From Octopus sinensis (lineage: Eukaryota): a stretch of 64,000 bases of DNA. The stretch covers positions 30,566,001 through 30,630,000 of the forward strand of contig NC_043020.1 of NCBI RefSeq assembly GCF_006345805.1. The letters are read 5' to 3'. Numbering within the stretch: the stretch's first letter is position 1; each line of letters begins with the position of its first letter. Shown here one piece after another: positions 4,530 to 61,059 of the stretch. The notes under the pieces are model-generated. The model did no database searches, was not told the DNA's origin, and was given only the letters and a program-made list of their open reading frames with translations. The translations under genes and the position numbers were made by a program.

Positions 4530-4900
4530 CAGTAGTCTTATTTCTATATCGTGCTTTCACTTCACTACCGAGCGCAGCTCTGTGTGCCTTGGGTATGTGC
4601 TGTGGTTTGCTGTGATGTTTTTATGGTTACTGTATTGAAAGTGTTTTGTGAAGTGCCCTGTTGTGCAATTTTCTGTATGTTATATATATTTGTAAGTCCT
4701 GGTGTTTATGTTATGTATTTGTCTGAATATGCTTTTTCTTATCATCCCTAGTGCGCCTGCTATGATAGGAATTGTTTCTGTTTTTTGACTCCACATTCGT
4801 GTTACCTCTATTTCCAGGTCTTTGTATTTTGAAAGTTTCTCCATTTCTTTTAGAGAAGCGTTGTCATCTGTTGATATCGATACATCAATTAGAAAGCATT
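4530..4900 (-). mobile_element. R4/Dong-clade LINE, 5'-truncated 3' end (REL endonuclease + 3' UTR)
   Basis: Minus frame KCFLIDVSISTDDNASLKEMEKLSKYKDLEIEVTRMWSQKTETIPIIAGALGMI is a PD-(D/E)xK REL C-terminus. Flanked by (TAA)n on both sides. Confidence 0.85.
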
Positions 4901-11245: not shown

Positions 11246-11752
11246 ATCTTTTACCGATAACTAGTTTCAATCATTGGACTACGGCCAGGCTACGGCACCT
11301 CCTTGAAATCTAGCATATTGACCCCAGCACTTATTTTTAAAATCTGATATTTATTCTGTCGGTCTCCAAAGAGGAAAATGCCCGTCTGCAAGTCTTTCAG
11401 ACGAGTCCACCACACTACATCTTTTACCATATCTCTATAAGAAGACTAAACTACCCGCCTTCCTTGCCAAAAGAAGGTGAACCGTCTATTCTCACTGTTG
11501 TGGGTAGTGTAAACCAACCAATACCACTTGTCAAGTGATGAGTGGGGTATAAATACTTTCGCAAACACACACACACACACATATACGACGAGCTTCCACA
11601 TAGTTTCCATCTGCCAGATTCACTCACACGGCATTGGTCGGCCCAAGGCTATTGTAGAAGATACTTGCGCAAGATGCCGCGCTGTGAGAGTGAACCCGAA
11701 ACCACATGGTTGCAAAACGAGCTTCTTAACCATTCAGCCATGCTTGCACCTC
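11246..11752 (-). mobile_element. SINE family B, interrupted by a 131-bp insertion
   Basis: Reverse-complement family B head (11690-11750) and tail (11246-11365), with 11366-11496 being foreign sequence. Confidence 0.8.
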
Positions 11753-12269
11753 GTATTATTGTTAAACGGGCTTAAATTATTATTATTGTTGTTGTTATTG
11801 TTCCTATTTGATGTCAATTGAAATATAATGACATAAAACAATTGTTTCTCTGAGATATTAATTCCTACCAGAGAAAGGGAAGAGGCCCCACAATAGGAAA
11901 ACATTGAGGAAGAAGAATGAGAGAGAGAGAGGGAGAAAGGGTGAGAGATTGGGGAAGGAAAAGAGAAAGGAAAAGGAGAGGAGAGATAAGGAAGGGAGAG
12001 AGTGGTGAGAAAAAAGGTTCCCACTAAAGACATACTGATACCATCGTAGGCCTTACTGTTTTAGACCCTTGCTTTATCCTTCCGGGTTCAATAAAATAAA
12101 GGAGCAATGAAATACTGAAGTCGATGTAATCAACTCACCCCCACCCCTTAAGAAATTGCTGGTTTTGCGCCAAAATTTGAAATAATTGTTATTAAAAGCA
12201 CGTCATAAAAATAAAACTACTGAATAATAATAATGATAATAACAACAACAACAACAACAACAATAATAA

Positions 12270-16229: not shown

Positions 16230-17375
16230 GATGTAGTTCATTCCTTAAATCAAAAGTAAGGTCAAGGAAGTTAACCCTAGCAATGTCATTTTCTATGGCG
16301 ACAGAGAGACCAAGACACTCAAAGAATTTGAAAAGACTTTTTTCTCCCACGCAAGGACGGTGGCCGTGGTCTCAAGCCTGTATCGATGTCATATGAAGCA
16401 CAGATTGTGACAGTGAGCGAACGTCTGCAGCAGAGGAAAGATACCAGTAATTATCTTAATCAAGTTTGTGACCATGAAAGCAACAACATAATAAGGATCG
16501 ATAATGAAGTTGAAGAGAGGAATGGAATAAGTGCTGATGCAAATCTCTCCTCAAGGAACTTTGGTAAAATCTATTTATCAGAACAACAGAAAAGAACAGA
16601 CTCGTTCACTGAGAAGCTAGTATCTGGTTACTTGGCACATAAAACACAAACCATAGAAGGGAATGATCATGTCAAAAGCTTGGCATGGAGTACCGACAAG
16701 TTTCTGACATCCCACTTTGAAGGCTACATCTCTGCAATCCAAGAACAAAGGGTCCTCACCAAGTACTTACAGCACAAAAAGGCAGAAAACGTCAGCAGAC
16801 AAGAAATATAGGCTTTGCGAGATCAAGACTGAAGACCTCAACCACATTATTGCCAACTATGAGAGAATGTCTTCCAGATATTATCTTCTTACGAAGTATG
16901 ATACGGTGACCACAACAGTCTGTAAAAAGAATAATAGAAATGAAAATACCTACAAACGAAGTTGACCATATTGAGACCGATAGGTCAAAAGAATATTGGT
17001 AAAACTTGAAAATTAAAACAGCCGCCAGTTTAAAATGCAACCGGTCAGATATCGTTGTGTAGGACCACAAAGAAAAGATGTGTTCTGTAATGGAAATTAT
17101 CTGCCCTCTGGACACGAATGTGGTTAGAAATATACAAGAGAAAGAGGACATCTGTGGACCACTGATGGGGTGTTTGCAAATCCAGGAGCCAAGATACAAT
17201 TTCAGCTTCATATCTATTATTATCGGAGCAACAGGATACATACCGATCAGTCTGGAGCAGAGTATGGCCGAACTTGGAATTTAGGGAAGAGAATACAAAT
17301 CCTTAATTCATAAGCTACAAATGGTGGCGATATCTGGGACTAGAAAAACTGCGAAGAGTTTCTTAAGATTTAAAG
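16230..17375 (+). mobile_element. R4/Dong-clade LINE 3' third (RT end, CCHC knuckle, REL)
   Basis: FLPRKDGGRGLK, EGYISAIQEQ, KYRLCEIKTEDLNHII, MCSVMEIICPLDTNVVRNIQEKED and IIIGATGYIP in successive plus frames, with frameshifts. Confidence 0.85.
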
Positions 17376-20350: not shown

Positions 20351-20754
20351 GGATGCGAATGGTTCTCTTCTGTTCATTCGGATAAGAAGCTGTAGAAATT
20401 GTCGCATGCACATACAAACACAAAAATTCTCCAGACATTTAGCTGTTATTTTTAGCATATCGAGTTTTGTGGCGAGGGCTTTACATGCCGTGATCCTTTT
20501 GCAATTTCATTGTATGTCTACACAAATGGCAACGGACGAAACAGCCGTTCATTTTCAGTTTTAGACAGCGGGATGGGGTGGTGAGTGGGGTGGCGATCAA
20601 TTTTGGGTTAAACCATAAAATCTTATTACTTTTACTTTTTAACTTATAATTTAGTATTTTCTTTTTTATAAATGGTTGTTGCTATAATAACCTTGTTTAT
20701 TTATATCATTTTAATCCAATTTATTATCAGTCTGATCATATTTATATTGTCATT

Positions 20755-23200: not shown

Positions 23201-24519
23201 CTGCCTTTCGTTCTTCCAAGGACAAAAGTGAAGATGACTTTTGCAGGATTTGAACACAGGACACAGAGAGTCAGACTGAATACTACTAAGTCTATTTCAT
23301 GCTGTAATGACTCCACCATTTCACCACCTTTGGACTGACCCAACAATGGACCTGAAACTAAAAAGACACAAGCAAACAAAATAAATAACAAAACACAAAA
23401 ACAAAAGTTTCTTTCAGAAAAAAAATTTAATTTAAAAAAATTAAAAACAACAACAGAATAAATTAATAAAAAAAAAACAGAAAGTCCCATCAATAAGTTA
23501 AAACTCGCTTGAAAAGGAAAAAAAACATTTAAAAAGATTTTTTTTAATAAAAAATGAATCTAAGTTTTGATAAAAAAAATTCTAAGAATGAAGAGATTCG
23601 GTGCCTTTAACCAAAAAAAAAATTTTATATAAATAAAAAAATTTTTTAGTTTGAAATATCACAATGAAAATTATAATTAAAAAAAAATGAAATTAAGGAG
23701 AAAATAAAATAAATTAACAATAAAAACTTTCAGATATGGAAAAATTTTCTGTAAAATATGAAACTTTCAGCATTGATGGAAGATTTCCTGAAATCTTTTT
23801 ACTTTTTGTTAATTTTTGATTTACATATTTCTTATTCAATTTTTTATTTTTTGGTAAAATATATTTTAAACATTTGCTGTTGTTGTTGCTGCTGCTCGCT
23901 CTTCAACCCCACCCACATACACACATCCAGATCAGCCCTGAGATTAAGTAGATCCTATTATCAAACAAGTTCCATCCATGACCTTTCCACCTTCCATACT
24001 GACACAGCATACTTAGTACTACCTTAGCCAATGCAACTTTAAACATGATAATCTCTAATATGATGATTTGGCTACTATTTCTAGCAAGCTGAGGTTCCCT
24101 CACTTGGTTTCCCATTAGCGACCCTACCTACTTACATCTAGTCCTCCAGATGCTGGAACTGAACGCTTGAATTTCAGTTTCCCAGTGTTTCCAAGCTTAT
24201 ACAGACAAGGCAAAAAACCTTTAACACTTTTGAAACCCATCTGGGGCCACCCTTGGTGCGATGGCACAAACTTCCTGTTTTAAAGTTTCTTAAATCAAAA
24301 CCTTCCATCAAAACTCCAAGTTAATTCAAATTCCAGAAACCAAGTGTGGCTGAGTGCTTAAGAAGCTGGCTACCAAACCATGTGGTCCTGGGTTCAGTCC
24401 TGCTGCATGGCACCTTCGGCAAGTATCTTCTACTTATATAGTCCCAAGCCAACCAATGCTTTGTGGATTTGGTACATAGAAACGGAAAGAAGCCCGTTGT
24501 GCTTGTGTGTGTGTGTGTT

Positions 24520-24870: not shown

Positions 24871-25054
24871 TAAGTTACTGTCTGAATGGGCAGTCATGGC
24901 TGGAATACCTTTTACCATAATAGTGCTACATAATCCAGTTCAACCTGGGTTTAAACATAAAACAACAACAAATGACAGTAAAAAGGATAATTATAATGGA
25001 TCCATGCAGATCCAGTGAGGAATCTGTGGACGAGATACCATGGAATTTCATGAA

Positions 25055-25380
25055 AGTGGCTTCCCATCGGATACGACGAGGGTTCCCGTTGATCCAATCA
25101 ACGGAACAGCTTGCTCATGAAATTAACATGCAAGTGGCTGAGTACTCCCCAGACACATGTACCCTTAACATAGTCCTCAGGGAGATTCAGTGTGACACAG
25201 AATGAGACAAGGCTGCCCCTTTGAATTACAGGGGCCACTCAATTTTGCCAGCTGAGTAGACTGGAGCAATAACGTGAAATAAAGCGGCTTGCTCAAGGAC
25301 ACAATCTGCTGCTGGGAATTGAACTCGTGACCTTACAAACAAGAGCCGAATACCCTAACCACTGAGCCACATGGCTTCAG
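25055..25380 (-). mobile_element. SINE family A, full length, with 13-bp target-site duplication
   Basis: Reverse complement of 556-875. GGAATTTCATGAA occurs on both flanks (25042-25054 and 25381-25393). Confidence 0.85.
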
Positions 25381-26541
25381 GGAATTTCATGAAGCAACCA
25401 TGTTGATTCACATTAGAGACACCAGATCTGTGGATTAAACATTTCTTTTCATCACAGACTCATCCAGGCTCTCATCACAGACTCAATCACTTCAAAGACT
25501 CTCTCAGATCCTTGCTCAATGGCATCAGATCCCAGGTTTTATTTACAACATTGCTAGACACACAGACACACAAACCAAATAAAAAAAGGAATGCAGTTTA
25601 TCAGACAACAGGAAGCCCAAGCTGACAAAGGAGCATTTGACGTTCTAGAAATAGCAGCCAAGTCTCCCTCAAATACTCTTAAAAACAAAGAAAGATTTAT
25701 TGGATGATGTTGATTTCACTGAATTTGTTGGAGAAGAGAGAGACTGAATGGTCATGACTGGAATGGCTTTGATAACAGGAACCTTCTAGATCAAAGCTGA
25801 CTAAACCACAATGAGCTGATCCACAGCCACACACATCTCCCTGATCCAACTGATTCTACAATATAAGACCTGAATCCCTTTTTGTTAAAATCTCAACATC
25901 TGGAGAGGAATGAGAGTGGGGTTTCAAAAGAAGGCTGCAGTAGTGTTTAACCCAGGTCAACCCTATCTGAGTAGATCTATGATCAAAGGCGTTCCATCCA
26001 TGACCATGCTGTCTTTTTACATTGGGTTGTCAGATAAATTCGTTAGTTCTTTCGTTTCCCTTTCCATTTATTTTAAATCCTTTCCAATTTTATTTGAACA
26101 TTTTTATTGGAGTGTTTTAAGGCTGTTTTGTTTTTTGTTTCTTTGTATTTTGTTTTTCGTAACTCAATTCTTCCTTCACAACTTTTGTACATCATTGTTG
26201 AAGTCTGAATAATTTTTACCTTTTTTCAGACAAATGATGGTGGAATACCAAGTAGAAAAAAACAAAAACAAAAAAACGAATGAATGAATTTATTTGACAA
26301 CCCAAATATGCCAAACACTACAGAATCTAATATGCCATTCTTTTCATTTTTTTTCTTTGAAGAAGGCAGTGTGTGAGCATAAGATTTGACTGCTATTTCT
26401 AGTAAGTCAAATAGTGACCACATTGAGGCTCTCGTGCCAAACTCCCTTGATTGAAATGTTTTATAATTTGTTCTGTTAATGAGAGAGGAAAAGCAAATTA
26501 GCAGTCATCAAATTAATCGATATTGCAGAAGGAAGAGAGAG

Positions 26542-27013
26542 AATGTCATAGCAACAAGGATTCAGAAATAAACTTTATGATAACAACAACCGTGATGGAA
26601 GAGTAACCATGGCAACAGAGACTACAATGTAGCACTGTCATAAGTAGTAATAGTAACAGCAAATGAAGAAGTTGTCATAGAAACAGTGACAGTTTGTCAC
26701 CCTAGCAACAATGATGGTGAGGTAATCGTGACAACCTGTAGTCATGACAACAGCACTGATGGGATTGCTGTGACAACAGACAGAATGACAGCAAAAGTGA
26801 TAAGTCACCATTAATGATGTTAGTGTTGGCATTACAACAGAAGTGATGGCAGTTGTTATAGTAACAGAGGTAGTAACGTGGCCATGACAACAGAGAGAGA
26901 GATGATCATGATGATGGTGTTGTTGTTGTTATTGAAAAAGTGTTATTATACACAAGAGCAGAGATGATGGAATGGAGAGAGAGAGAGAGAGATGAAACTG
27001 TTGCTAGGGTTAC
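26542..27013. promoter_or_regulatory. Cluster of RFX X-box-like 14-mers
   Basis: About 10 matches or near-matches to GTHNYYATRRNAAC, e.g. GTAACCATGGCAAC 26603, GTTGTCATAGAAAC 26671, GTAGTCATGACAAC 26738, GTTGTTATAGTAAC 26852. Confidence 0.5.
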
Positions 27014-27233
27014 CGTATTTTCTGGCAAACAAGTCAGTGCCGTACATTTTGTGTAGGAATGAAGTGGAACCATTCAATCGTCTTCACAATCTTTCCAAAT
27101 CCTGCTGCAAAGATTTTACATGGAATTTTTGGTCCCCCAAAGTCATCTCAAATGTATAAATTGACGACCTGCCTTTTTCCTGGTTGTAAATTTTGGTCAG
27201 AAAACTCCGGCTTGTATGCCGGAAAATACAGCA
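27011..27233. mobile_element. Tc1/pogo-type MITE
   Basis: Terminal inverted repeats TACCGTATTTTCTGGCAAACAAG and CTTGTATGCCGGAAAATACAGCA (~23 bp, few mismatches). No coding capacity. Confidence 0.75.
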
Positions 27234-27358
27234 TCCATTGACAACGATATTGTCATAACAGCATCAATGAAAAAACAACTGAAGCAGAAATAAAAAAAAA
27301 AAAAAGAATTATGTGTAAGAGTTTTGAGAAACTCTCAGAATATTCTGGTGAGAATTCT

Positions 27359-27616
27359 TCAGTCAGGCAATTTGTTGTAAAGCAAGAAGTCTGTGAGATT
27401 GTGCCACTGGGTGCAGTCTTCATAAAGATAAGTCATTGAGGACTGCAGCGACGGCTGCAAGAAGTCACGCTCATATTCAAACAGCAACAAGGCAACGCCC
27501 CAAACAAGAGAGAAAAATAGGGGGAACGGTTTCTGAAAGGGCTGCGGGATGTATTGTTTCTTCACGGCAATCTGGGCGAGAGCATAGGTGATTCTTGACA
27601 GCAAGTATAGATTTAT
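27359..27616 (-). CDS. PXMP4: PXMP4 terminal coding exon 4
   Basis: Polypyrimidine tract (ctct)n-ccAG; exon reads INLYLLSRITYALAQIAVKKQYIPQPFQKPFPLFFSLVWGVALLLFEYERDFLQPSLQSSMTYLYEDCTQWHNLTDFLLYNKLPD*. LQPSLQSSMTYLYED is the diagnostic PXMP4 C-terminal motif. Spliced CDS 615 nt = 204 aa + stop. Confidence 0.97.
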   Translation of the reverse strand: MNLYLLSRITYALAQIAVKKQYIPQPFQKPFPLFFSLVWGVALLLFEYERDFLQPSLQSSMTYLYEDCTQWHNLTDFLLYNKLPD

Positions 27617-27828
27617 CTGGAAGAGAGAGAGAGAGAGAAAACTTGAAAGGTGAGAGACAGACAGGCAATATTTTATTAAAGGTGAACAAGTGATTAAATT
27701 CTCAAAATCATTGTCATCCTCATCATCATCATAATCACAATCATCACCACCATCATTTGTGCTTTGTACATATCTGAGTGTGTGTGTGTGTTGTTATGAG
27801 TGTGTGCATGTGGCTGTCTGTATTTTGA

Positions 27829-27869
<41 letters not shown>

Positions 27870-28049
27870 TGTGTTGTGTGTGTATGATTTCTGATGCAGT
27901 TGTTATTTACTGTTGTTTAGCCTCAGATCAGCTTTGTGATAAAAAATGACCTACAATCAAAAGTAGTTCCATCCATGGCCATCTCAGCTTTTATTCAGAC
28001 ATAGTGTATCTAGAACCACATTATCCATCCATCTTCTCTGCCCACAATT

Positions 28050-28290
28050 CTTGGAAGTGTTGTTGGGGGTAGAGCCATCCTTAAGCAGCTTCTCCATTGG
28101 CCCCTATCACAAGCATCCATCATTACCCTTTCCTGCAGGATCCCCAAGCATGACCAACTGAGTCTATGGATGTCATCCAGCCATCTTGTGCTTGCTTTAC
28201 CCCCAGGTGTCCTGTTGGTTGGATCAGCTTGAAGAAGCCATCCTGCAACATTCTAACCAAATCACTCAGGTACCAGAGCTGTAACTTGTT
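28050..28290 (-). mobile_element. RTE-like 3' fragment (same family as 39480-39760)
   Basis: Shares CATCCATAGACTCAGTTGGT..TGCTTGGG.ATCC with 39616-39650. Confidence 0.6.
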
Positions 28291-28320
28291 AATGTGGAAA
28301 AGTAACAGCTGGTCCTAGAG

Positions 28321-28570
28321 CGGTGTTTCTCAACCCCTTTTTTACCTATGGATCCCTTTGGTTCCTATTTCACTCAGGTGGACCCTCACAACCATTCCAT
28401 GTTTTAAAAAAAAATCCTATTATATTTGATTAGGAATTGTATAAAAGATTGTCAAAATATTCTGTGTCTTGTGGAATTATAAACAATTTATTGCAGGTAA
28501 ATTTTAACAACAAAATCTTATATGGACCCCCACCTGCAAGGGTCACAGGGACACCGGTTGAGAACCACTG
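28321..28570. mobile_element. hAT (Charlie-like) MITE in PXMP4 intron 3
   Basis: TIRs CGGTGTTTCTCAACC and GGTTGAGAACCACTG. Flanks TCCTAGAG and GTCTAGAA resemble the 8-bp NTCTAGAN target of Charlie elements. Confidence 0.8.
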
Positions 28571-28791
28571 GTCTAGAAAGACTCCCCGTTCTCAGAGCTG
28601 TGCATTCATCCTATCAAGTAGCGTTATTCCAGAGATTCTTCAGAGGAACCCCTATTTTCGCTCCTGGTATCCGCACTCGTACTCTTTTGGCAATTACCCA
28701 ACATTCATGTCTCAACCACTCTACAGAGTGTACTCGGTGCTTTTCACAGGCCACCAACGAAATATACAAAAAGTACAGAGAACCACCTTAC

Positions 28792-28990
28792 CTGTTCGTT
28801 GACCTTGTTGTACCTGCCAAACACACAATACCCTGCTATGACACTGGCGCAAAAAATATGCGAAGGTTTCTTTTTTTTGCCAAACCATTCAAAGATTTGC
28901 AGAATGACTTTGTGGATGACATTGAAGAGGGCTAAGCTCTTTGCATGGGTGTACGTTGCTTCCAGGATTCCACGGAACTTCTCAGTAAGT
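28792..28990 (-). CDS. PXMP4: PXMP4 coding exon 3
   Basis: Acceptor ttcttcttttgtacAG; 199-nt exon reading LTEKFRGILEATYTHAKSLALFNVIHKVILQIFEWFGKKKKPSHIFCASVIAGYCVFGRYNKVNEQ; donor GTAAGG. Aligns with the PXMP4 Tim17/22-like membrane region. Confidence 0.96.
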
Positions 28991-30910: not shown

Positions 30911-32432
30911 CATAAAAAAAAAAATTTTAAGAGGAGAGGAGGCACTGGAAGAGGTGATGATGAAAAGGTCATAGTGAGACAGATACAGGTGCCTTGCTGT
31001 AGAGGAAGTACAAGGTTACCTGGCCAGAGAGAGAGAAAGATCAGGAATGAAGACAGAAACAGGTGTGCTACTGCAAAGAAAATACACGGTTGCCCAACCT
31101 GAGGGAATTGCAGGAGAAAGAGAGAGAGAGAGAGACCGCAGGATAGAGATGGTGGCAAAAATGCTGGGTATACTCACAAGGAACAGGGATCAGAGTATAA
31201 ATGGGATGATGAGTAAAGGAAGAGAGAGATGTAGATGGTGGCAAGTGCCAGGGCATAGCCTTGAGGTTCAAATGCCAAAACTTAAGTGGCAGGATATTGC
31301 GAAGGGAGTGTGATTAAAGAGTGTGAGTAAGTGGTGAAAGACCTGGGTATATATAGAGTTAGAGGGGCTACTGGATAGCAATGATACAGAGGAACAGGGG
31401 TGTGGGGACACGATTGGGGGTGAGAGCTAGGCATAGTGTATGAAGGAGGAAATGCGAGAAAGAGAGAAGGGATGTAGATTGGTTTGTTGGGGTGGGGTGA
31501 GGGGAAAGTTTTCTTGTTAGATGTGAGTGGAACACCCAGGTCGGGGGGGGGGCCTGCAGATAGCAATAACAGAGTGAGATAGGGCATGTGGGTAGAATGC
31601 ACAGGTCATGGCTAAGTGGAGAACAATGATACAGTGGCACGGGGCTAAGAGGACAGGATTGGGGAGTGAGAGGTAATTATAGTACATGAAGCAGAAATGT
31701 GAGGGAGAGAAGAGATGTAGAGACATAGTTCGGTTTGTTGTGGTGGGGTGTGTGAGAAGTTTTCTTGTGGAGTGTGGGTGGGACATACACCACTTCTAGA
31801 ACTCAGTTTCGATGATGTGGGTGGGTCTTCTCAAGAACTTCACATCACCAGACATCTCAGTCCATTGTCATTTCCTCCTGACATCATATACATGTGTGTG
31901 TGTGGGTGTGTGGGTGTGGGTGTGTGGGTGTGGGTGTGTGTGTGTGGGTGTGTGTGTGTGGGTGTGTGTGTGTGGGTGGGTGTGTGTATCCTTTATCTTT
32001 TACTTACTTCATTCATTTTAAATTCATAAAAGGTGTTTTTTTTAAAATTTTTGATATATATATATTATATTTTGTGAAATTTGATTTAGTATTTCTAAAT
32101 TGAATTTTTCCCTGTAAGTTACTCACAAGACATTAGTTGGCCCTTGGCTAGAATAGAAGACACATTCTCAAGGTGCCACACAATGGGACGGAACCTAAAA
32201 CTACAATAACCTTCTTAACAAGACAGCTATGTCCACTTATAATCTGTGTACAAGTGAGGCTTCACCTGAAGGTTTGAATTAATACTTTAATCGAGGTTGT
32301 CTCAGGTATGTCAATATTGGAATGGTTAGTGAAGGTGGGCTAAGGTGAGTTTGTGTTAATGTTAATTACAAGCAATAACAGGTGGGTTAGTGCTGGTTAA
32401 GGTTCGAAAATATAGAATGAATCCAAACTTAC

Positions 32433-32495
32433 GTGCCAGACTTGAAGAGAAATGTCATTACCAGACTGTGAGGGAAGCGAACCTTGCAACCATAT
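32433..32495 (-). CDS. PXMP4: PXMP4 coding exon 2
   Basis: Acceptor tttctgtttcAG; 63-nt exon reading (V)YGCKVRFPHSLVMTFLFKSG(T); donor GTAAGT. Matches PXMP4 YGAKIRAPHALVMTFLF. Phases fit exons 1 and 3. Confidence 0.96.
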
Positions 32496-34089: not shown

Positions 34090-35213
34090 TCAGGTTGGAA
34101 AAAAGTTATGTCCAGTTTAAAGTCTGTATTCATAAATAAAAAAACTTGTGTTTATAGAAATATTTAATCATTAATATAAAATCCATTCCTTCATAGAACC
34201 TCATTCTGTCTGTCAACAAGACCATCCAAATGATTCTGTGATCCCCTAAAACAAGTGATAATCAGAAGGTGCAAGGTCAGGAGAATATGGAAGATGAAGC
34301 AATTTCTGCCAACAGAGTTCTTTCTAAGAGATCTTTAGTCAATTGTGCAGTGTGTGGGTGGGCATTATTGCAATGCAGACTGACTCCCTTTCTGGTGACT
34401 AAGGATGGGTGACTTTTGTCCAAAGATGCTTTCAAATGACAAAGTTGATGGCAATAGAGATTGGCAGTGATTGCTTGGTTATTGCCTAACGATTCGTAAT
34501 GGATAATTCCTGGAATATCCCACCTTTCATTCAACATGATCTTCTTTGGATAAAGTCGTCCTCTTGCTTACTGAGGAGGTCTGCATCCTTGACTGATCCA
34601 TTGATAACAGCATTCCACTCCTCATCACCAATTACAAGCCCATCCAAAAATGGCATCTGACCGTTGTTATGTAAGCAATGACTCACAACAAGCAACACAG
34701 TGCTGCTGATTCCATGGAGAAAGGTCGTGTGGGACCCATTTTCCAACTACTGAAACCTTTCCAATTCTTTTCAGTTCACGTACGGTAGTCGTATGGCTTA
34801 CTTAAAATTTCCTAGCCCTGGTGGCAGGATTCTTGGGAGTCGAGAGCTTTTGGACGACCCTTCTTTGGCTCGTCATCTAAGCTGAAGTTTCCACTTCAAA
34901 AATGGAAAAACCACCTCCTAGCAACTCCTTTCTTTTGCTACATTATCTCCTCAAGACCTCTGAATGGATGTTGTTGTTGCTCTGACATTGACCCCTTTAT
35001 GAAACTTGTAGAGTAAAGCAAGTCTGATGCGTTCTTTGGTTGGAATGAACACTGGGGGTTAATATTGAAGGAGATTCTGAACAACATTCTTTTAATCTGA
35101 AAGAAGAAAATATAAATCACTCATTGTTTCATTCTATGATTGATAACAAAAGCAATGAATGTTGCCTATAAGTTCCTCTTGAAAATCCAACGAAACTTTC
35201 GTTCCAATCTGAT
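34090..35213 (-). mobile_element. Near-full-length decayed mariner transposon
   Basis: TIRs TCAGGTTGGAAAAAAG and CTTTCGTTCCAATCTGA. Minus frames give WDIPGIIHYESL...ITANLYCHQL...LHCNNAHPHTAQLTK and LVIGDE, typical of a mariner DD34D transposase with stops and frameshifts. Confidence 0.85.
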
Positions 35214-40390: not shown

Positions 40391-41156
40391 GAAGAAAAAA
40401 AGATGAAGAATCGATTTGTTTTGCTGTCAATTCTTGATTTGAATCAAACTGTTTGATAGAAGACGACGCCTAACATTCGATTGCTATTTTATTTTATTGA
40501 CATTTGTTGTAGAGCAGTATTAACAGCCCAGGCAAATCGATGCACTAAGCCAGGGATACGTAGATCAGAACGTGGTCCCTAGACTCATGACGCCCCTGGG
40601 AAACTACCCAATGTGCCGGTTAAACTAAAGCCTTTGACCCAAACAAAAGAAAAAGTGTAATAGGTGTAAAACAATTTGCTCTAAACGAATGTGGAAAACA
40701 AAAATGCGCGCTGGCGAAGGAGGATTGGGAAGATTCCGATGGTGAATGTTCCGAGTCGCCTCACCAGAGCCAGGAAACAAAAGAAAAATATAATAATAAT
40801 GAAATGATTGTATACAGTGCTCAGGTGCCCCACAACAAAAGTGGCTGAACCCCATCGGAGGATGAACCCCAAGTTAACCTTGGGTGGATTTGGACGTAAA
40901 GGCCTTAACTAAATACCAGAAGGCATTTTGTTCGACGCTCCGCCGATTCTGTCAAAACCCCGCTTTATGTTGAATTATCGATCAAGCCAAGTCGATAGGT
41001 TTTTTTAAAAATATTATCGATCAATTAATTATCGATCGAACCAAATCGATGGAGTTTTTTAAAAAAATTTTGTGTATTTTTTCTGAAATAAAAAAAAACT
41101 TACGACAGACATATTTATAAAAAGTGACAAAATATTATGAAAAGCATCTCACGTAC

Positions 41157-41251
41157 ACAATTCCGTTCCTGAAGGCTTTGATTAGCGAAAGATAAGGTTT
41201 GTATTTCTCGTTGGAAAGAATCGCATTGATGAGGACAAGAGCCGAGGCCAT
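41157..41251 (-). CDS. PXMP4: Peroxisomal membrane protein 4 (PMP24), coding exon 1
   Basis: Minus strand ATG at 41251 reads MASALVLINAILSNEKYKPYLSLIKAFRNGI+GT, then donor GTACGT. Matches the PXMP4 N-terminal motif (LKGFRNGAV in human). 95 nt, phase-2 intron. Confidence 0.95.
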
Positions 41252-41289
41252 GATGAGTGTCTGCTGCGGTGAAGAGGGAAAATGTTACA

Positions 41290-49194: not shown

Positions 49195-50865
49195 TGGTAG
49201 AGAGAGCCAAGCCAATTGAAACTGGTAGAGAGAGCCAAGCCAATTGGAACTGGTAGAGAGAGCCAAGCCAATTGAAACTGGTAGAGAGAGCCAAGTCAAT
49301 TGAAACTGGTAGAGAGAGCCAAGTCAATTGAAACTGGTCGAGAGAGCCAAGCCAATTGAAACTGGTCGAGAGAGCCAAGTCAATTGAAACTGGTAGAGAG
49401 AGCCAAGTCAATTGGAACTGGTAGAGAGAGCCAAGCCAATTGAAACTGGTAGAGAGAGCCAAGCCAATTGAAACTGGTAGAGAGAGCCAAGTCAATTGAA
49501 ACTGGTCGAGAGAGCCAGGCCAATTGAAACTGGTCGAGAGAGCCAAGTCAATTGAAACTGGTAGAGAGAGCCAAGTCAATTGAAACTGGTAGAGAGAGCC
49601 AAGTCAATTGAAACTTTAGAGAGAGCCAAGTCAATTGAAACTGGTAGAGAGAGCCAAGTCAATTGAAACCGGTAGAGAGAGCCAAGTCAATTGAAACTGG
49701 TCGAGAGAGCCAAGCCAATTGAAACTGGTAGAGAGAGCCAAGTCAATTGAAACTGGTAGAGAGAGCCAAGTCAATTGAAACTGGTAGAGAGAGCCAAGTC
49801 AATTGAAACTGGTAGAGAGAGCCAAGTCAATTGAAACTGGTAGAGAGAGCCAAGTCAATTGAAACTGGTAGAGAGATCAAGTCAATTGAAACTGGTAGAG
49901 AGAGCCAAGTCAATTGAAACTGGTAGAGAGAGCCAAGTCAATTGAAACTGGTAGAGAGAGCCAAGTCAATTGAAACTGGTAGAGAGAGCTAAGTCAATTG
50001 AAACTGGTAGAGAGAGCCAAGCCAATTGAAACTGGTAGAGAGAGCCAAGTCAATTGAAACTGGTAGAGAGAGCCAAGTCAATTGAAACTGGTAGAGAGCC
50101 AAGTCAATTGAAACTGGTCGAGAGAGCCAAGTCAATTGAAACTGGTCGAGAGAGCCAAGCCAATTGAAACTGGTAGAGAGAGCCAAGTCAATTGAAACTG
50201 GTAGAGAGAGCCAAGTCAATTGAAACTGGTAGAGAGAGCCAAGCCAATTGAAACTGGTAGAGAGAGCCAAGCCAATTGAAACTGGTAGAGAGAGCCAAGT
50301 CAATTGAAACTGGTAGAGAGAGCCAAGTCAATTGAAACTGGTCGAGAGAGCCAAGCCAATTGAAACTGGTAGAGAGAGCCAAGCCAATTGAAACTGGTAG
50401 AGAGAGCCAAGCCAATTGAAACTGGTAGAGAGAGCCAAGCCAATTGAAACTGGTCGAGAGAGCCAAGCCAATTGAAACTGGTAGAGAGAGCCAAGCCAAT
50501 TGAAACTGGTAGAGAGAGCCAAGCCAATTGAAACTGGTAGAGAGAGCCAAGCCAATTGAAACTGGTAGAGAGAGCCAAGCCAATTGAAACTGGTCGAGAG
50601 AGCCAAGCCAATTGAAACTGGTAGAGAGAGCCAAGTCAATTGAAACTGGTCGAGAGAGCCAAGCCAATTGAAACTGGTAGAGAGAGCGAAGTCAATTGAA
50701 ACTGGTAGAGAGAGCCAAGTCAATTGAAACTGGTAGAGAGAGCCAAGCCAATTGAAACTGGTCGAGAGAGCCAAGTCAATTGAAACTGGTCGAGAGAGCC
50801 AAGCCAATTGAAACTGGTAGAGAGAGCCAAGCCAATTGAAACTGGTCGAGAGAGCCAAGCCAATT
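49195..50865. repeat. 28-bp minisatellite, ~60 units
   Basis: Unit GGTAGAGAGAGCCAAG(T/C)CAATTGAAACT in head-to-tail array with no unique spacers. Confidence 0.97.
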
Positions 50866-58756: not shown

Positions 58757-61059
58757 GAACAAAAGGGTCAGAGAGACAAACAAAAGGGTCAGAGAGACAA
58801 ACAAAAGGGTCAGAGAGACAAACAAAAGGGTCAGAGAGACAAACAAAAGGGTCAGAGAGACAAAGAAAAGGGTCAGAGAGACGAACAAAAGGGTCAGAGA
58901 GACAAACAAAAGGGCCAGAGAGACAAACAAAAGGGTCAGAGAGACGAACAAAAGGGTCAGAGAGACAAACAAAAGGGTCAGAGAGACAAACAAAAGGGTC
59001 AGAGAGATAAAGAAAAGGGTCAGAGAGACAAACAAAAGGGTCAGAGAGACAAAGAAAAGGGCCAGAGAGACAAAGAAAAGGGTCAGAGAGACAAAGAAAA
59101 GGGTCAGAGAGACAAACAAAAGGGTCAGAGAGACAAACAAAAGGGTCAGAGAGACGAACAAAAGGGTCAGAGAGACAAACAAAAGGGTCAGAGAGACAAA
59201 GAAAAGGGTCAGAGAGACAAAGAAAAGTGTCAGAGAGACAAAGAAAAGGGTCAGAGAGACAAACAAAAGGGTCAGAGAGACAAAGAAAAGGGTCAGAGAG
59301 ACGAACAAAAGGGTCAGAGAGACAAAGAAAAGGGTCAGAGAGACAAAGAAAAGGGTCAGAGAGACGAAGAAAAGGGTCAGAGAGACAAACAAAAGGGTCA
59401 GAGAGACAAAGAAAAGGGTCAGAGAGACAAAGAAAAGGGTCAGAGAGACAAAGAAAAGGGTCAGAGAGACAAACAAAAGGGTCAGAGAGACAAACAAAAG
59501 GGTCAGAGAGACAAACAAAAGGGTCAGAGAGACGAACAAAAGGGTCAGAGAGACGAACAAAAGGGTCAGAGAGACAAAGAAAAGGGTCAGAGAGACAAAG
59601 AAAAGGGTCAGAGAGACAAACAAAAGGGTCAGAGAGACAAAGAAAAGGGTCAGAGAGACAAAGAAAAGGGTCAGAGAGACAAAGAAAAGGGTCAGAGAGA
59701 CAAAGAAAAGGGTCAGAGAGACAAACAAAAGGGTCAGAGAGACAAAGAAAAGGGTCAGAGAGACAAACAAAAGGGTCAGAGAGACAAAGAAAAGGGTCAG
59801 AGAGACAAACAAAAGGGTCAGAGAGACAAACAAAAGGGTCAGAGAGACAAACAAAAGGGTCAGAGAGACAAAGAAAAGGGTCAGAGAGACAAACAAAAGG
59901 GTCAGAGAGACAAAGAAAAGGGTCAGAGAGACAAACAAAAGGGTCAGAGAGACAAACAAAAGGGTCAGAGAGACAAACAAAAGGGTCAGAGAGACAAACA
60001 AAAGGGTCAGAGAGACAAAGAAAAGGGTCAGAGAGACAAACAAAAGGGTCAGAGAGACAAACAAAAGGGTCAGAGAGACAAAGAAAAGGGTCAGAGAGAC
60101 AAACAAGAGTCAGAGAGACAAACAAAAGGGTCAGAGAGACAAAGAAAAGGGTCAGAGAGACAAACAAAAGGGTCAGAGAGACAAAGAAAAGGGTCAGAGA
60201 GACAAAGAAAAGGGTCAGAGAGACAAAGAAAAGGGTCAGAGAGACAAAGAAAAGGGTCAGAGAGACAAAGAAAAGGGTCAGAGAGACAAAGAAAAGGGTC
60301 AGAGAGACAAAGAAAAGGGTCAGAGAGACAAAGAAAAGGGTCAGAGAGACAAACAAAAGGGTCAGAGAGACAAAGAAAAGGGTCAGAGAGACAAAGAAAA
60401 GGGTCAGAGAGACAAAGAAAAGGGTCAGAGAGACAAAGAAAAGGGTCAGAGAGACAAACAAAAGGGTCAGAGAGACAAACAAAAGGGTCAGAGAGACAAA
60501 CAAAAGGGTCAGAGAGACAAACAAAAGGGTCAGAGAGACAAACAAAAGGGTCAGAGAGACAAAGAAAAGGGTCAGAGAGACAAACAAAAGGGTCAGAGAG
60601 ACAAACAAAAGGGTCAGAGAGACAAACAAAAGGGTCAGAGAGACAAACAAAAGGGTCAGAGAGACAAACAAAAGGGTCAGAGAGACAAAGAAAAGGGTCA
60701 GAGAGACAAACAAAAGGGTCAGAGAGACAAAGAAAAGGGTCAGAGAGACAAAGAAAAGGGTCAGAGAGACAAAGAAAAGGGTCAGAGAGACAAACAAAAG
60801 GGTCAGAGAGACAAAGAAAAGGGTCAGAGAGACAAAGAAAAGGGTCAGAGAGACAAAGAAAAGGGTCAGAGAGACAAAGAAAAGGGTCAGAGAGACAAAG
60901 AAAAGGGTCAGAGAGACAAACAAAAGGGTCAGAGAGACAAAGAAAAAGGTCAGAGAGACAAAGAAAAGGGTCAGAGAGACAAAGAAAAGGGTCATAGAGA
61001 CAAAGAAAAGGGTCAGAGAGACAAACAAAAGGGTCAGAGAGACAAACAAAAGGGTCAGA
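58757..61059. repeat. 21-bp minisatellite, ~110 units
   Basis: Unit AAAAGGGTCAGAGAGACAAA(C/G), 2.3 kb head-to-tail array. Confidence 0.98.

What the first reader, a model, noticed from the sequence alone, without database searches (positions are those of the whole stretch)
26542..27013. Dense homotypic array of ~10 RFX X-box-like palindromes downstream of PXMP4
Seen 14-mers: AATGTCATAGCAAC 26542, GTAACCATGGCAAC 26603, GTTGTCATAGAAAC 26671, GTCACCCTAGCAAC 26696, GTAATCGTGACAAC 26722, GTAGTCATGACAAC 26738, ATTGCTGTGACAAC 26764, GTTGGCATTACAAC 26825, GTTGTTATAGTAAC 26852, GTGGCCATGACAAC 26878, and GTTGCTAGGGTTAC 27000 (overlaps the MITE end). The spacers are unrelated and irregular, yet the GTN...AAC geometry is kept, which simple slippage would not explain. 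Established: RFX factors bind GTHNYYATRRNAAC-type X-boxes and control ciliary and sensory-neuron genes. Inference: a selected RFX enhancer cluster, or a motif-preserving decayed array, in or near the PXMP4 3' UTR.
Basis: partly seen in the sequence, partly recalled or inferred. Interest (0 to 1): 0.7.

Follow-up and report, generated by a model that had tools for sequence, protein, structure and literature searches.

The report
Decayed minisatellite with X-box-like core
The cluster of RFX-like palindromes is real, but it is an old, eroded tandem repeat of a 26-27-base unit just downstream of the PXMP4 coding sequence, and nothing tested here shows that it works as an RFX enhancer.

Summary
All eleven 14-mers are at the stated coordinates. 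The cluster is far denser than composition allows: 4 exact and 9 one-mismatch hits to GTHNYYATRRNAAC in 472 bp, against 0.00 and 0.07 in dinucleotide shuffles.

The claim of unrelated, irregular spacers is wrong:
- Five of nine box-to-box distances are 25-27 bp (P=0.003).
- The spacers share TGATG(G).
- 356 bp tiles as 14 passes of the 27-nt unit AGCAGTGATGGCA|GTTGTCATGACAAC.
- Spacer columns are kept as well as box columns (67% against 70%).

This is a degenerate minisatellite. It is invaded by microsatellites and split by a MITE-like insert. It starts about 80 nt after the stop codon of a four-exon Pmp24/PXMP4 gene on the minus strand, probably inside its 3' UTR.

I scored the boxes with a matrix built from 30 validated nematode X-boxes. 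Two (26603, 26671) score like good real sites, three are marginal and six are sub-threshold.

Validated X-boxes are promoter-proximal. These lie behind a peroxisomal gene.

Tests for motif-specific preservation are marginal and affected by how the boxes were chosen. Cross-species data could not be reached. Verdict: an ordinary decayed tandem repeat, with an RFX role unproven and unlikely.

The parts
26529..26893 (.). Core of the degenerate minisatellite: about 14 units of 25-27 nt. The consensus is AGCAGTGATGGCA + GTTGTCATGACAAC. Several units are truncated or broken by indels (26556-26657, 26736-26751, 26778-26812).
   Evidence: Splitting after AAC gives units of 25-27 nt. Wraparound alignment makes 14 passes and scores 190, against 5.5 +/- 14.7 for shuffles. 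Box spacing is non-random and the spacers share TGATGG.
26603..26616 (.). GTAACCATGGCAAC, the best X-box-like unit core.
   Evidence: Exact match to GTHNYYATRRNAAC. It scores 20.6 bits, higher than 77% of validated C. elegans sites.
26671..26684 (.). GTTGTCATAGAAAC, the second strong X-box-like core.
   Evidence: Exact match on both strands. It scores 18.1 bits, higher than 60% of validated sites.
26738..26751 (.). GTAGTCATGACAAC, a marginal X-box-like core.
   Evidence: Exact match to the consensus. It scores 15.5 bits, about the 13th percentile of validated sites.
26852..26865 (.). GTTGTTATAGTAAC, a marginal X-box-like core.
   Evidence: Exact match on both strands. It scores 15.0 bits, about the 10th percentile.
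26878..26891 (.). GTGGCCATGACAAC, a marginal X-box-like core.
   Evidence: One mismatch to the consensus. It scores 15.3 bits.
26892..26998 (.). Mosaic stretch of the array overgrown by simple repeats: (GA)n, GATGATCATGATGATGGTG, (GTT)4 and (GA)9.
   Evidence: Read directly from the sequence. TRF finds (GA)9 at 26975-26992. Family D6 covers this stretch.
26999..27013 (.). One unit core in inverted orientation: TGTTGCTAGGGTTAC is the reverse complement of the 26696 core.
   Evidence: Inverted repeat I7 is 93% complementary over 15 nt with 26696-26710. The matrix score is 11.7 bits.
27008..27236 (.). MITE-like insert of about 220 bp that splits the array. Its imperfect terminal inverted repeats are at 27008-27033 and 27211-27236.
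   Evidence: Inverted repeat I1 is 26 nt and 81% complementary. The window holds no other copy. The family was not identified.
27237..27280 (.). Remnant of the array beyond the insert: ATTGACAAC..ATTGTCATAACAG..AAAACAAC.
   Evidence: Members of families D1 and D4 lie at 27248-27273 and 27251-27263. The unit split shows the same.
27359..27616 (-). Last coding exon of the Pmp24/PXMP4-family gene. The acceptor AG is at 27618-27617 and the stop codon TGA at 27361-27359.
   Evidence: Read from the sequence. It is 62% identical to P0001. It aligns by tblastn at 64% identity, E=8e-34. The joined four-exon protein matches Pfam PF02466, E=8e-8.
26289..26294 (-). First canonical AATAAA on the minus strand after the stop codon, 1065 nt downstream. 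It implies a 3' UTR of about 1.1 kb that contains the array and the insert.
   Evidence: Scan for poly(A) signals. Use of this signal is inferred, not shown.
28756..28989 (-). Third coding exon of the Pmp24/PXMP4-family gene (approximate limits).
   Evidence: tblastn, E=8e-10.
32432..32494 (-). Second coding exon (approximate limits).
   Evidence: tblastn, 67% identity over 21 aa.
41153..41275 (-). First coding exon (approximate limits).
   Evidence: tblastn, E=1.5e-4, collinear with the other exons.

Best explanation
The region is an old, degenerate minisatellite. A unit of 26-27 nt was amplified head to tail by slippage or unequal exchange. The unit is a 12-13-nt spacer holding a TGATGG triplet motif, followed by the palindromic core GTTGTCATGACAAC and then AG.

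The array then decayed by substitutions and small indels to about 70% identity with its consensus. It was overgrown by (GA)n, (GTT)n and (GAT/GGT)n microsatellites and split by a MITE-like insertion of about 220 bp.

It begins about 80 nt after the stop codon of a Pmp24/PXMP4 gene on the minus strand. It is most likely carried passively inside that gene's 3' UTR of about 1.1 kb.

The likeness to RFX X-boxes comes from the unit core. That core is a perfect palindrome two transitions away from the ideal GTTGCCATGGCAAC, and the changed positions are ones the degenerate nematode consensus tolerates. Each copy of the unit therefore repeats the motif.

Shown: the sites exist, the period, the homology of the spacers, equal retention of box and spacer, and the position downstream of the coding sequence.

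Inferred: the amplification mechanism, inclusion in the 3' UTR, and the absence of RFX function. The two best boxes would probably bind an RFX domain in vitro.
For: - Period: units of 25-27 nt. Five of nine box gaps are 25-27 nt (P=0.003). The wraparound alignment makes 14 passes of a 27-nt consensus.
- Whole-unit homology: families D1 and D2 stay in register at 62-81% over 26-34 nt. TGATG and TGATGG are shared by the spacers (2 of 5000 and 0-1 of 5000 shuffles). The AG after AAC is conserved.
- No extra conservation of the box: box columns 69.9%, spacer columns 67.0% (P=0.58).
- Unit subfamilies: ATAG-type and ATGA-type cores point to duplication of variant units (family D5).
- Triplet substructure: lags 3 and 6 have z=3.7 and 3.5.
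- Tolerance of disruption: the MITE-like insert and the microsatellites lie inside the array.
- Genomic setting: the window is full of tandem repeats, including young minisatellites of similar unit length, 28 bp x 60 and 21 bp x 110.
- Position: downstream of the last Pmp24 exon, with the first minus-strand AATAAA at 26289. [quoted passage not shown] In Drosophila an X-box alone does not predict RFX control (PMC2375033).
- Site quality: only 2 boxes score at or above the median of validated sites, and 6 of 11 score below 90-97% of them.
Against: - Two boxes are as good as validated X-boxes, and the consensus core scores 18.0 bits.
- A random 27-nt unit would hold a site of at least 15.1 bits with probability 1.6e-4, and of at least 18 bits with probability 2.6e-5. 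The likeness is therefore a rare coincidence for any one repeat.
- A uniform star-decay model predicts fewer X-box-compatible units than seen (P from 0.001 to 0.17 depending on the rate).
- With unit subfamilies and per-unit difference counts held fixed, a trend remains (P=0.015-0.07 for exact matches, 0.04-0.18 for one mismatch).
- The strictly specified X-box columns are kept better than the degenerate ones (79.6% against 60.2%, P=0.005). This drops to P=0.10 once columns whose consensus base is A are set aside; the plus strand is A-rich and such columns are kept more often.
- TRF does not call the array at any threshold tried, and ungapped autocorrelation at lag 26 is weak (z=2.0). The period therefore rests on gapped analysis.
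- Neither 3' UTR inclusion nor the identity of the neighbouring gene on the low-coordinate side was established.
Confidence: 0.8

Rival explanations
1. The array is a selected homotypic cluster of RFX sites. It would be an enhancer or silencer, born by tandem amplification, that recruits RFX dimers to control a nearby ciliary or neuronal gene.
For: - Site density is far above composition.
- Two boxes score like good validated sites and three are marginal.
- There is a mild excess of X-box-compatible variation.
- Strict columns are kept better than degenerate ones.
- Genes with more than one functional X-box are known in C. elegans (PMC3245922).
Against: - The sites are copies of one unit, and its spacer is kept equally well.
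- Six of the eleven boxes are sub-threshold.
- Position 3 is T in only 5 of 10 boxes, while its mirror position 12 is A in 10 of 10. The array's best-kept block, AACAG, runs out of the motif.
- The array lies downstream of a peroxisomal-membrane gene, whereas validated sites are promoter-proximal.
- An insert and microsatellites are tolerated inside it.
- The conservation tests are biased because the boxes were chosen for GT...AAC.
Confidence: 0.07
2. The repeat acts at the RNA level. As part of the PXMP4 3' UTR, the repeated CUGUUGUCAUG and CCAUCA motifs would be multiple docking sites for an RNA-binding protein or a microRNA.
For: The array is probably inside the 3' UTR. The best-kept block, CAACAG on the plus strand and CUGUUG in the mRNA, is asymmetric and not confined to the X-box.
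Against: The mRNA-sense strand shows no unusual folding (z=-0.7). There is no Rfam match. I could not match the motif to any known RNA element. Retention across the unit is broadly even, as expected for neutral decay.
Confidence: 0.05
3. The array is the internal or subterminal repeat region of a transposable element, and the palindromic core is a transposase-binding motif rather than an RFX site.
For: The core is palindromic. One unit lies in inverted orientation next to the MITE-like element (I7 and I8). The window is rich in transposon remnants, including a mariner transposase and SINE-like copies.
Against: The window holds no second copy of the array or of the insert. No terminal repeats or target-site duplication bracket the array. 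The only candidate flanks are A/T runs (I2). The insert's own terminal repeats do not contain the core.
Confidence: 0.08

Closest known systems
RFX/DAF-19 X-box promoter motif (GTHNYY AT RRNAAC; 14-15-bp imperfect palindrome)
   Same: The unit core GTTGTCATGACAAC fits the consensus. The right halves ATGACAAC, ATAGTAAC, ATAGAAAC and ATGGCAAC are identical to right halves of validated nematode sites, for example xbx-2, osm-6, dyf-5 and osm-5 (PMC3245922 Table 1). Two boxes score above the median validated site.
   Different: [quoted passage not shown] Here there are 10-14 tandem copies downstream of the stop codon of a peroxisomal-membrane gene. Most copies are sub-threshold, and the left half-site is poorly kept.
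Minisatellites, tandem repeats with 10-100-bp units, including those in 3' UTRs
   Same: Head-to-tail units of 26-27 nt, homology over the whole unit, unit subfamilies and interspersed microsatellites. The window also holds younger arrays of similar unit length.
   Different: The array is much more decayed than arrays usually annotated as minisatellites, at about 70% identity to the consensus and with many indels. TRF does not report it. Copy-number polymorphism, the usual hallmark, could not be tested.
Homotypic clusters of transcription-factor binding sites in enhancers (my own knowledge, not checked in a paper here)
   Same: Many sites for one factor lie within a few hundred bp, well above background.
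   Different: In such enhancers the sites sit in unrelated sequence and are individually conserved. Here the intervening sequence is homologous too and the spacing is periodic, which is the signature of duplication.

Membership tests
RFX X-box cis-regulatory site | A 14-15-bp imperfect palindrome that matches the X-box consensus or matrix at the level of validated sites. | tested here: inconclusive
   Four of eleven match the consensus exactly. Two of eleven score at or above the median of 30 validated sites, three lie at the 10th-13th percentile and six lie below 90-97% of validated sites. The feature is met for a minority of the boxes.
RFX X-box cis-regulatory site | Promoter-proximal position upstream of the regulated gene: within 500 bp of the ATG in C. 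elegans, and searched within 1-3 kb in Drosophila. | tested here: not met
   The array lies 80-830 nt downstream of the PXMP4 stop codon on the minus strand. The positions of validated sites come from PMC3245922 and PMC2375033. Its position relative to the unidentified neighbouring gene at lower coordinates is unknown; no Pfam hit was found in the nearest open frames.
RFX X-box cis-regulatory site | The site is conserved between species in sequence and position, more than its flanks. | not testable with these tools
   The protein database returned one non-cephalopod relative. Exact look-ups of window proteins returned nothing. As a within-array proxy, box columns are kept 69.9% and spacer columns 67.0%.
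RFX X-box cis-regulatory site | RFX binding, and dependence of expression on RFX or on the X-box. | not testable with these tools
   This needs ChIP, DAP-seq, EMSA or a reporter assay.
RFX X-box cis-regulatory site | The target gene belongs to the ciliary or sensory programme. | tested here: not met
   The adjacent gene belongs to the Tim17/Pmp24 family (PF02466), that is the peroxisomal membrane protein PXMP4. That function is from my own knowledge. The other neighbouring gene is unknown.
Minisatellite (tandem repeat) | Head-to-tail copies with a constant period of 10-100 bp. | tested here: met
   Units are 25-27 nt. Five of nine gaps are 25-27 nt, P=0.003. The cyclic alignment makes 14 passes. 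Caveats: TRF makes no call and the ungapped lag-26 signal is only z=2.0.
Minisatellite (tandem repeat) | Copies are homologous over the whole unit, not only over a short motif. | tested here: met
   Spacers share TGATG and TGATGG. Families D1 and D2 run 26-34 nt in register at 62-81%. Spacer columns match the consensus at 67%.
Minisatellite (tandem repeat) | Copy number varies between individuals or species. | not testable with these tools
   No other genome or read set of this organism could be reached.
Homotypic TF-site cluster enhancer | Several sites for one factor within a few hundred bp, above the background expectation. | tested here: met
   None of 1000 shuffles reach the observed counts. 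Four of the window's six sites scoring at least 15.1 bits lie in the array.
Homotypic TF-site cluster enhancer | The sites are embedded in unrelated sequence, so that their maintenance needs selection rather than recent duplication. | tested here: not met
   The spacers are homologous and the spacing is periodic.

The most novel reading that the evidence does not exclude
Tandem amplification of a unit that carries an X-box created a multi-site RFX platform at the 3' end of PXMP4. The animal now uses it as a distal enhancer or silencer for a neighbouring gene. The two to five still-competent boxes are held by selection while the rest decay. This would be an example of a minisatellite giving birth to a homotypic transcription-factor cluster in a cephalopod.
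Probability: 0.06. Interest if true: 0.55.

Novelty: new member of a known kind. Interest (0 to 1): 0.12.

Why it matters
As it stands it matters little. It is one more eroded tandem repeat in a repeat-rich genome.

Its use is as a caution for motif scans. A repeat unit that contains a palindrome multiplies a transcription-factor-like motif into an apparent enhancer cluster. Composition-matched shuffles cannot expose this, because they destroy the repeat as well.

If the boxes did prove to be bound and conserved, the locus would show how repeat amplification can build a multi-site RFX element away from a promoter.

Tried and rejected
- TRF on 25000-28500 at minimum score 30 does not report the array. 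It is too decayed, so I used a gapped cyclic alignment instead.
- Ungapped autocorrelation gives its strongest signals at lags 3 and 6 and only z=2.0 at lag 26. On its own it is not proof of the period.
- blastn of 26300-27400 against the whole window finds no second copy of the array or the insert, only GA and GTT microsatellites.
- Rfam at gathering thresholds finds nothing in the window.
- RNA folding of the array gives z=-0.7 on the PXMP4-sense strand and z=-2.3 on the plus strand, where 1 of 100 shuffles folds as well. This is not convincing, so I rejected a structured-RNA reading.
- The protein database search with the last exon returned one unnamed Logan protein, P0001, at 62% identity. 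It sits on contigs of about 1 kb and looks vertebrate.
- Exact look-ups of two window open frames found nothing on record.
- A Pfam scan given long DNA references failed because of stop codons.
- A Pfam scan of the open frames nearest the array on the low-coordinate side found no family, so the neighbouring gene stays unknown.
- Literature searches for RFX in cephalopod regulatory genomics and for octopus minisatellites found nothing specific.
- Scans of the bacterial, viral and metagenome collections were not run, because they cannot hold this locus.

Full report
**Observation**

In 26542-27013 there are 4 exact positions, 9 with at most one mismatch and 15 with at most two. Dinucleotide-preserving shuffles of the same 472 bp give 0.00, 0.07 and 0.72, and none of 1000 reaches the observed counts. 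Order-2 and order-3 Markov models of the region also fall short, except for one of 1000 order-3 runs at two mismatches. The remaining 63.1 kb of the window holds 2 exact positions and 9 with at most one mismatch. The cluster is real.

**How good the sites are**

I built a log-odds matrix from the 30 validated 14-bp C. elegans X-boxes in Table 1 of PMC3245922 and scored the window.

- Validated sites scored leave-one-out have a median of 17.7 bits and a 10th percentile of 15.1 bits.
- 26603 (GTAACCATGGCAAC) scores 20.6 bits and 26671 (GTTGTCATAGAAAC) scores 18.1 bits. Both are as good as typical real sites.
- 26738, 26878 and 26852 score 15.5, 15.3 and 15.0 bits, which is marginal.
- The other six score 8.4-13.9 bits, below 90-97% of validated sites.
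- Only two other positions in the window reach 15.1 bits (51218 and 54843).

'About 10 X-boxes' is better stated as two strong, three marginal and six sub-threshold.

**The spacers are neither unrelated nor irregular**

- Cutting the sequence after each AAC gives pieces of 27, 25, 26, 16, 26, 61, 27 and 12+14 nt.
- The gaps between box starts are 61, 68, 25, 26, 16, 26, 61, 27, 26. Five of nine falling within 25-27 has P=0.003 under random non-overlapping placement.
- The 13 nt before the boxes share TGATG in 5 of 10 cases (2 of 5000 shuffles reach this) and TGATGG in 4 (0-1 of 5000).
- The two bases after the box are A in 9 of 10 and G in 7 of 10.
- The repeat finder aligns copies in register over 26-34 nt, through the spacers, at 62-81% identity (families D1 and D2).
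- A gapped cyclic alignment of 26536-26891 to the 27-nt consensus AGCAGTGATGGCA|GTTGTCATGACAAC makes 14 passes and scores 190, against 5.5 +/- 14.7 for shuffles. The consensus came from the data, so that margin is inflated, but it is large.
- The sequence also has triplet substructure, with z=3.7 and 3.5 at lags 3 and 6. This fits a unit of nine triplets built from GAT, GGT, GTT and AAC-like words.
- TRF does not report the array and ungapped lag 26 is weak (z=2.0). The repeat is old and full of indels.

**Extent and disruption**

After 26892 the array dissolves into (GA)n, GATGATCATGATGATGG, (GTT)4 and (GA)9. One unit core then appears in inverted orientation at 26999-27013, 93% complementary to 26696-26710 (I7).

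A MITE-like element of about 220 bp follows, with 26-nt terminal inverted repeats that are 81% complementary (27008-27033 and 27211-27236; I1). Array-like sequence resumes after it at 27237-27280 (members of D1 and D4). The element therefore landed inside the array.

The window contains no second copy of either the array or the insert.

**Gene context**

A recalled human PMP24 sequence was used only as a probe. It aligns to four collinear minus-strand exons at 41275-41153, 32494-32432, 28989-28756 and 27619-27362. The joined window protein passes the Pfam threshold for PF02466, the Tim17/Tim22/Tim23/Pmp24 family (E=8e-8). The last exon is 62% identical to P0001.

The last exon starts after the acceptor AG at 27618-27617 and ends with the stop codon TGA at 27361-27359. 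On that strand the array begins about 80 nt after the stop codon. The first canonical AATAAA is 1065 nt downstream, at 26289-26294. The array and the insert are therefore probably part of a 3' UTR of about 1.1 kb. This is an inference, since no transcript data were available.

The open frames nearest the array on the low-coordinate side match no Pfam family, so the next gene and its orientation are unknown.

The window as a whole is crowded with tandem repeats, including young minisatellites of 28 bp x 60 and 21 bp x 110. It also holds transposon remnants.

**Is the motif preserved beyond what decay of a repeat would leave?**

Some hints point the other way:

- The seven strictly specified X-box columns are kept at 79.6%, against 60.2% for the seven degenerate ones (P=0.005).
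- A uniform star-decay simulation from the consensus yields fewer compatible units than observed (P from 0.001 to 0.17 depending on the rate).

These hints weaken on inspection:

- Columns whose consensus base is A are kept at 83%, against 62% for the others, throughout the unit (P=6e-5). This is a composition effect of the A-rich strand. Among columns with another consensus base the strict-versus-degenerate contrast is 75% against 61% (P=0.10).
- The cores fall into two subfamilies, ATAG-type and ATGA-type, that share their differences. Variation at the R and Y positions is therefore partly inherited and not independent.
- With subfamilies and per-unit numbers of differences held fixed, the excess is P=0.015-0.07 for exact matches and 0.04-0.18 for one mismatch.
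- The palindrome is kept asymmetrically. Position 12 is A in 10 of 10, while its mirror position 3 is T in 5 of 10. The best-kept block, AACAG, runs out of the motif.

I conclude that motif-specific preservation is not demonstrated. A weak trend cannot be excluded without orthologous sequences.

**Comparison with known X-boxes**

[quoted passage not shown] In Drosophila an X-box match alone does not predict RFX dependence; conservation between species does (PMC2375033).

The present array fails the position criterion with respect to PXMP4. It sits behind a peroxisomal gene, not a ciliary one. Its conservation could not be tested.

The two cephalopod regulatory-genomics papers listed by the search (PMC9023564 and PMC13652810) do not mention RFX.

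**How rare is the coincidence?**

Under the window's base composition, a random 27-nt unit holds a site of at least 15.1 bits with probability 1.6e-4, and of at least 18 bits with probability 2.6e-5. For any single repeat this is a rare accident.

It becomes unremarkable across a multi-gigabase genome that may hold tens of thousands of minisatellites, and across the many factor motifs a reader would recognise. The genome size and repeat count are my own estimate. Units built from GTT and AAC triplets, and palindromic units, raise the odds further. The order-3 model already yields 1.4 one-mismatch sites per 472 bp.

**Other readings considered**

- A structured RNA. There is no Rfam hit, and folding gives z=-0.7 on the mRNA-sense strand and z=-2.3 on the plus strand.
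- A 3' UTR protein-binding or microRNA platform. I could assign no known motif.
- A transposon-internal repeat. There are no bracketing terminal repeats and no second copy in the window.

None is excluded outright, and none has positive support.

**Verdict**

The finding is a genuine but ordinary sequence feature. It is a decayed 26-27-nt minisatellite with a palindromic, X-box-like core, located in the probable 3' UTR of PXMP4 and split by a MITE-like insertion.

Its 'selected RFX enhancer' alternative is unsupported, at about 6-7%. The decisive test is comparison of orthologous loci and RFX occupancy data, which these tools could not reach.

Noticed in passing
window 49195-50865: Young minisatellite: 28-bp unit TGGTAGAGAGAGCCAAGTCAATTGAAAC, about 60 copies, 96% matches. 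It produces long spurious open frames on the minus strand.
   Followed up: no
window 58758-61059: Very regular minisatellite: 21-bp unit AACAAAAGGGTCAGAGAGACA, about 110 copies, 96% matches. It gives open frames of 300-790 aa on both strands that are artefacts of the repeat.
   Followed up: no
window 34280-34567 (-), wider about 34150-35200: Frameshifted remnant of a mariner-type transposase (..HCNNAHPHTAQ.. and ..LPYSPDLAPSDYHLF..). It matches Pfam PF01359, E=7.7e-10, and lies in the intron between PXMP4 exons 1 and 2.
   Followed up: partly
window 27008-27236: MITE-like element of about 220 bp with 26-nt terminal inverted repeats, 81% complementary. There may be a TA target site on the left (27011-27012). 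The window holds no other copy and the family is not identified.
   Followed up: partly
window 24321-24452 (-), about 11542-11772 (+), and sites in the PXMP4 introns: Recurrent translated motif ..RYLPKVP.S.TEPRT.W.. in several places. It suggests copies of one SINE-like element, possibly tRNA-derived. This was not checked at the DNA level.
   Followed up: no
window 25449-25490: Short 12-bp-period repeat TCATCACAGAC, 3.6 copies. On the minus strand it reads GUCUGUGAUGA, which contains CUGUGAU, the K-box / miR-2-seed complement as I remember it. It lies about 1.9 kb beyond the PXMP4 stop codon and is probably chance.
   Followed up: no
window 20678-20691 and 4617-4630: The only exact GTHNYYATRRNAAC matches outside the array: GTTGCTATAATAAC, which matches on both strands, and GTAACCATAAAAAC on the minus strand. 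Both score below 15.1 bits with the validated-site matrix.
   Followed up: partly
window 51218 and 54843: The only positions outside the array that reach 15.1 bits with the X-box matrix: ATCACCATGGAAAC and GTAACCAAGGCAAC. Their context was not examined.
   Followed up: no
window 16332-16808 (+) and 28013-28252 (-): Open frames with motifs that look like tails of retrotransposon reverse-transcriptase proteins (..PRKDGGRGL.. and ..RWLDDI..DR.QWR..). Neither matches Pfam at E<=0.01.
   Followed up: partly
window 26382-26412 and 25635-25665: A 31-bp inverted repeat pair, 87% identical, just beyond the putative PXMP4 poly(A) signal. It is unexplained.
   Followed up: no
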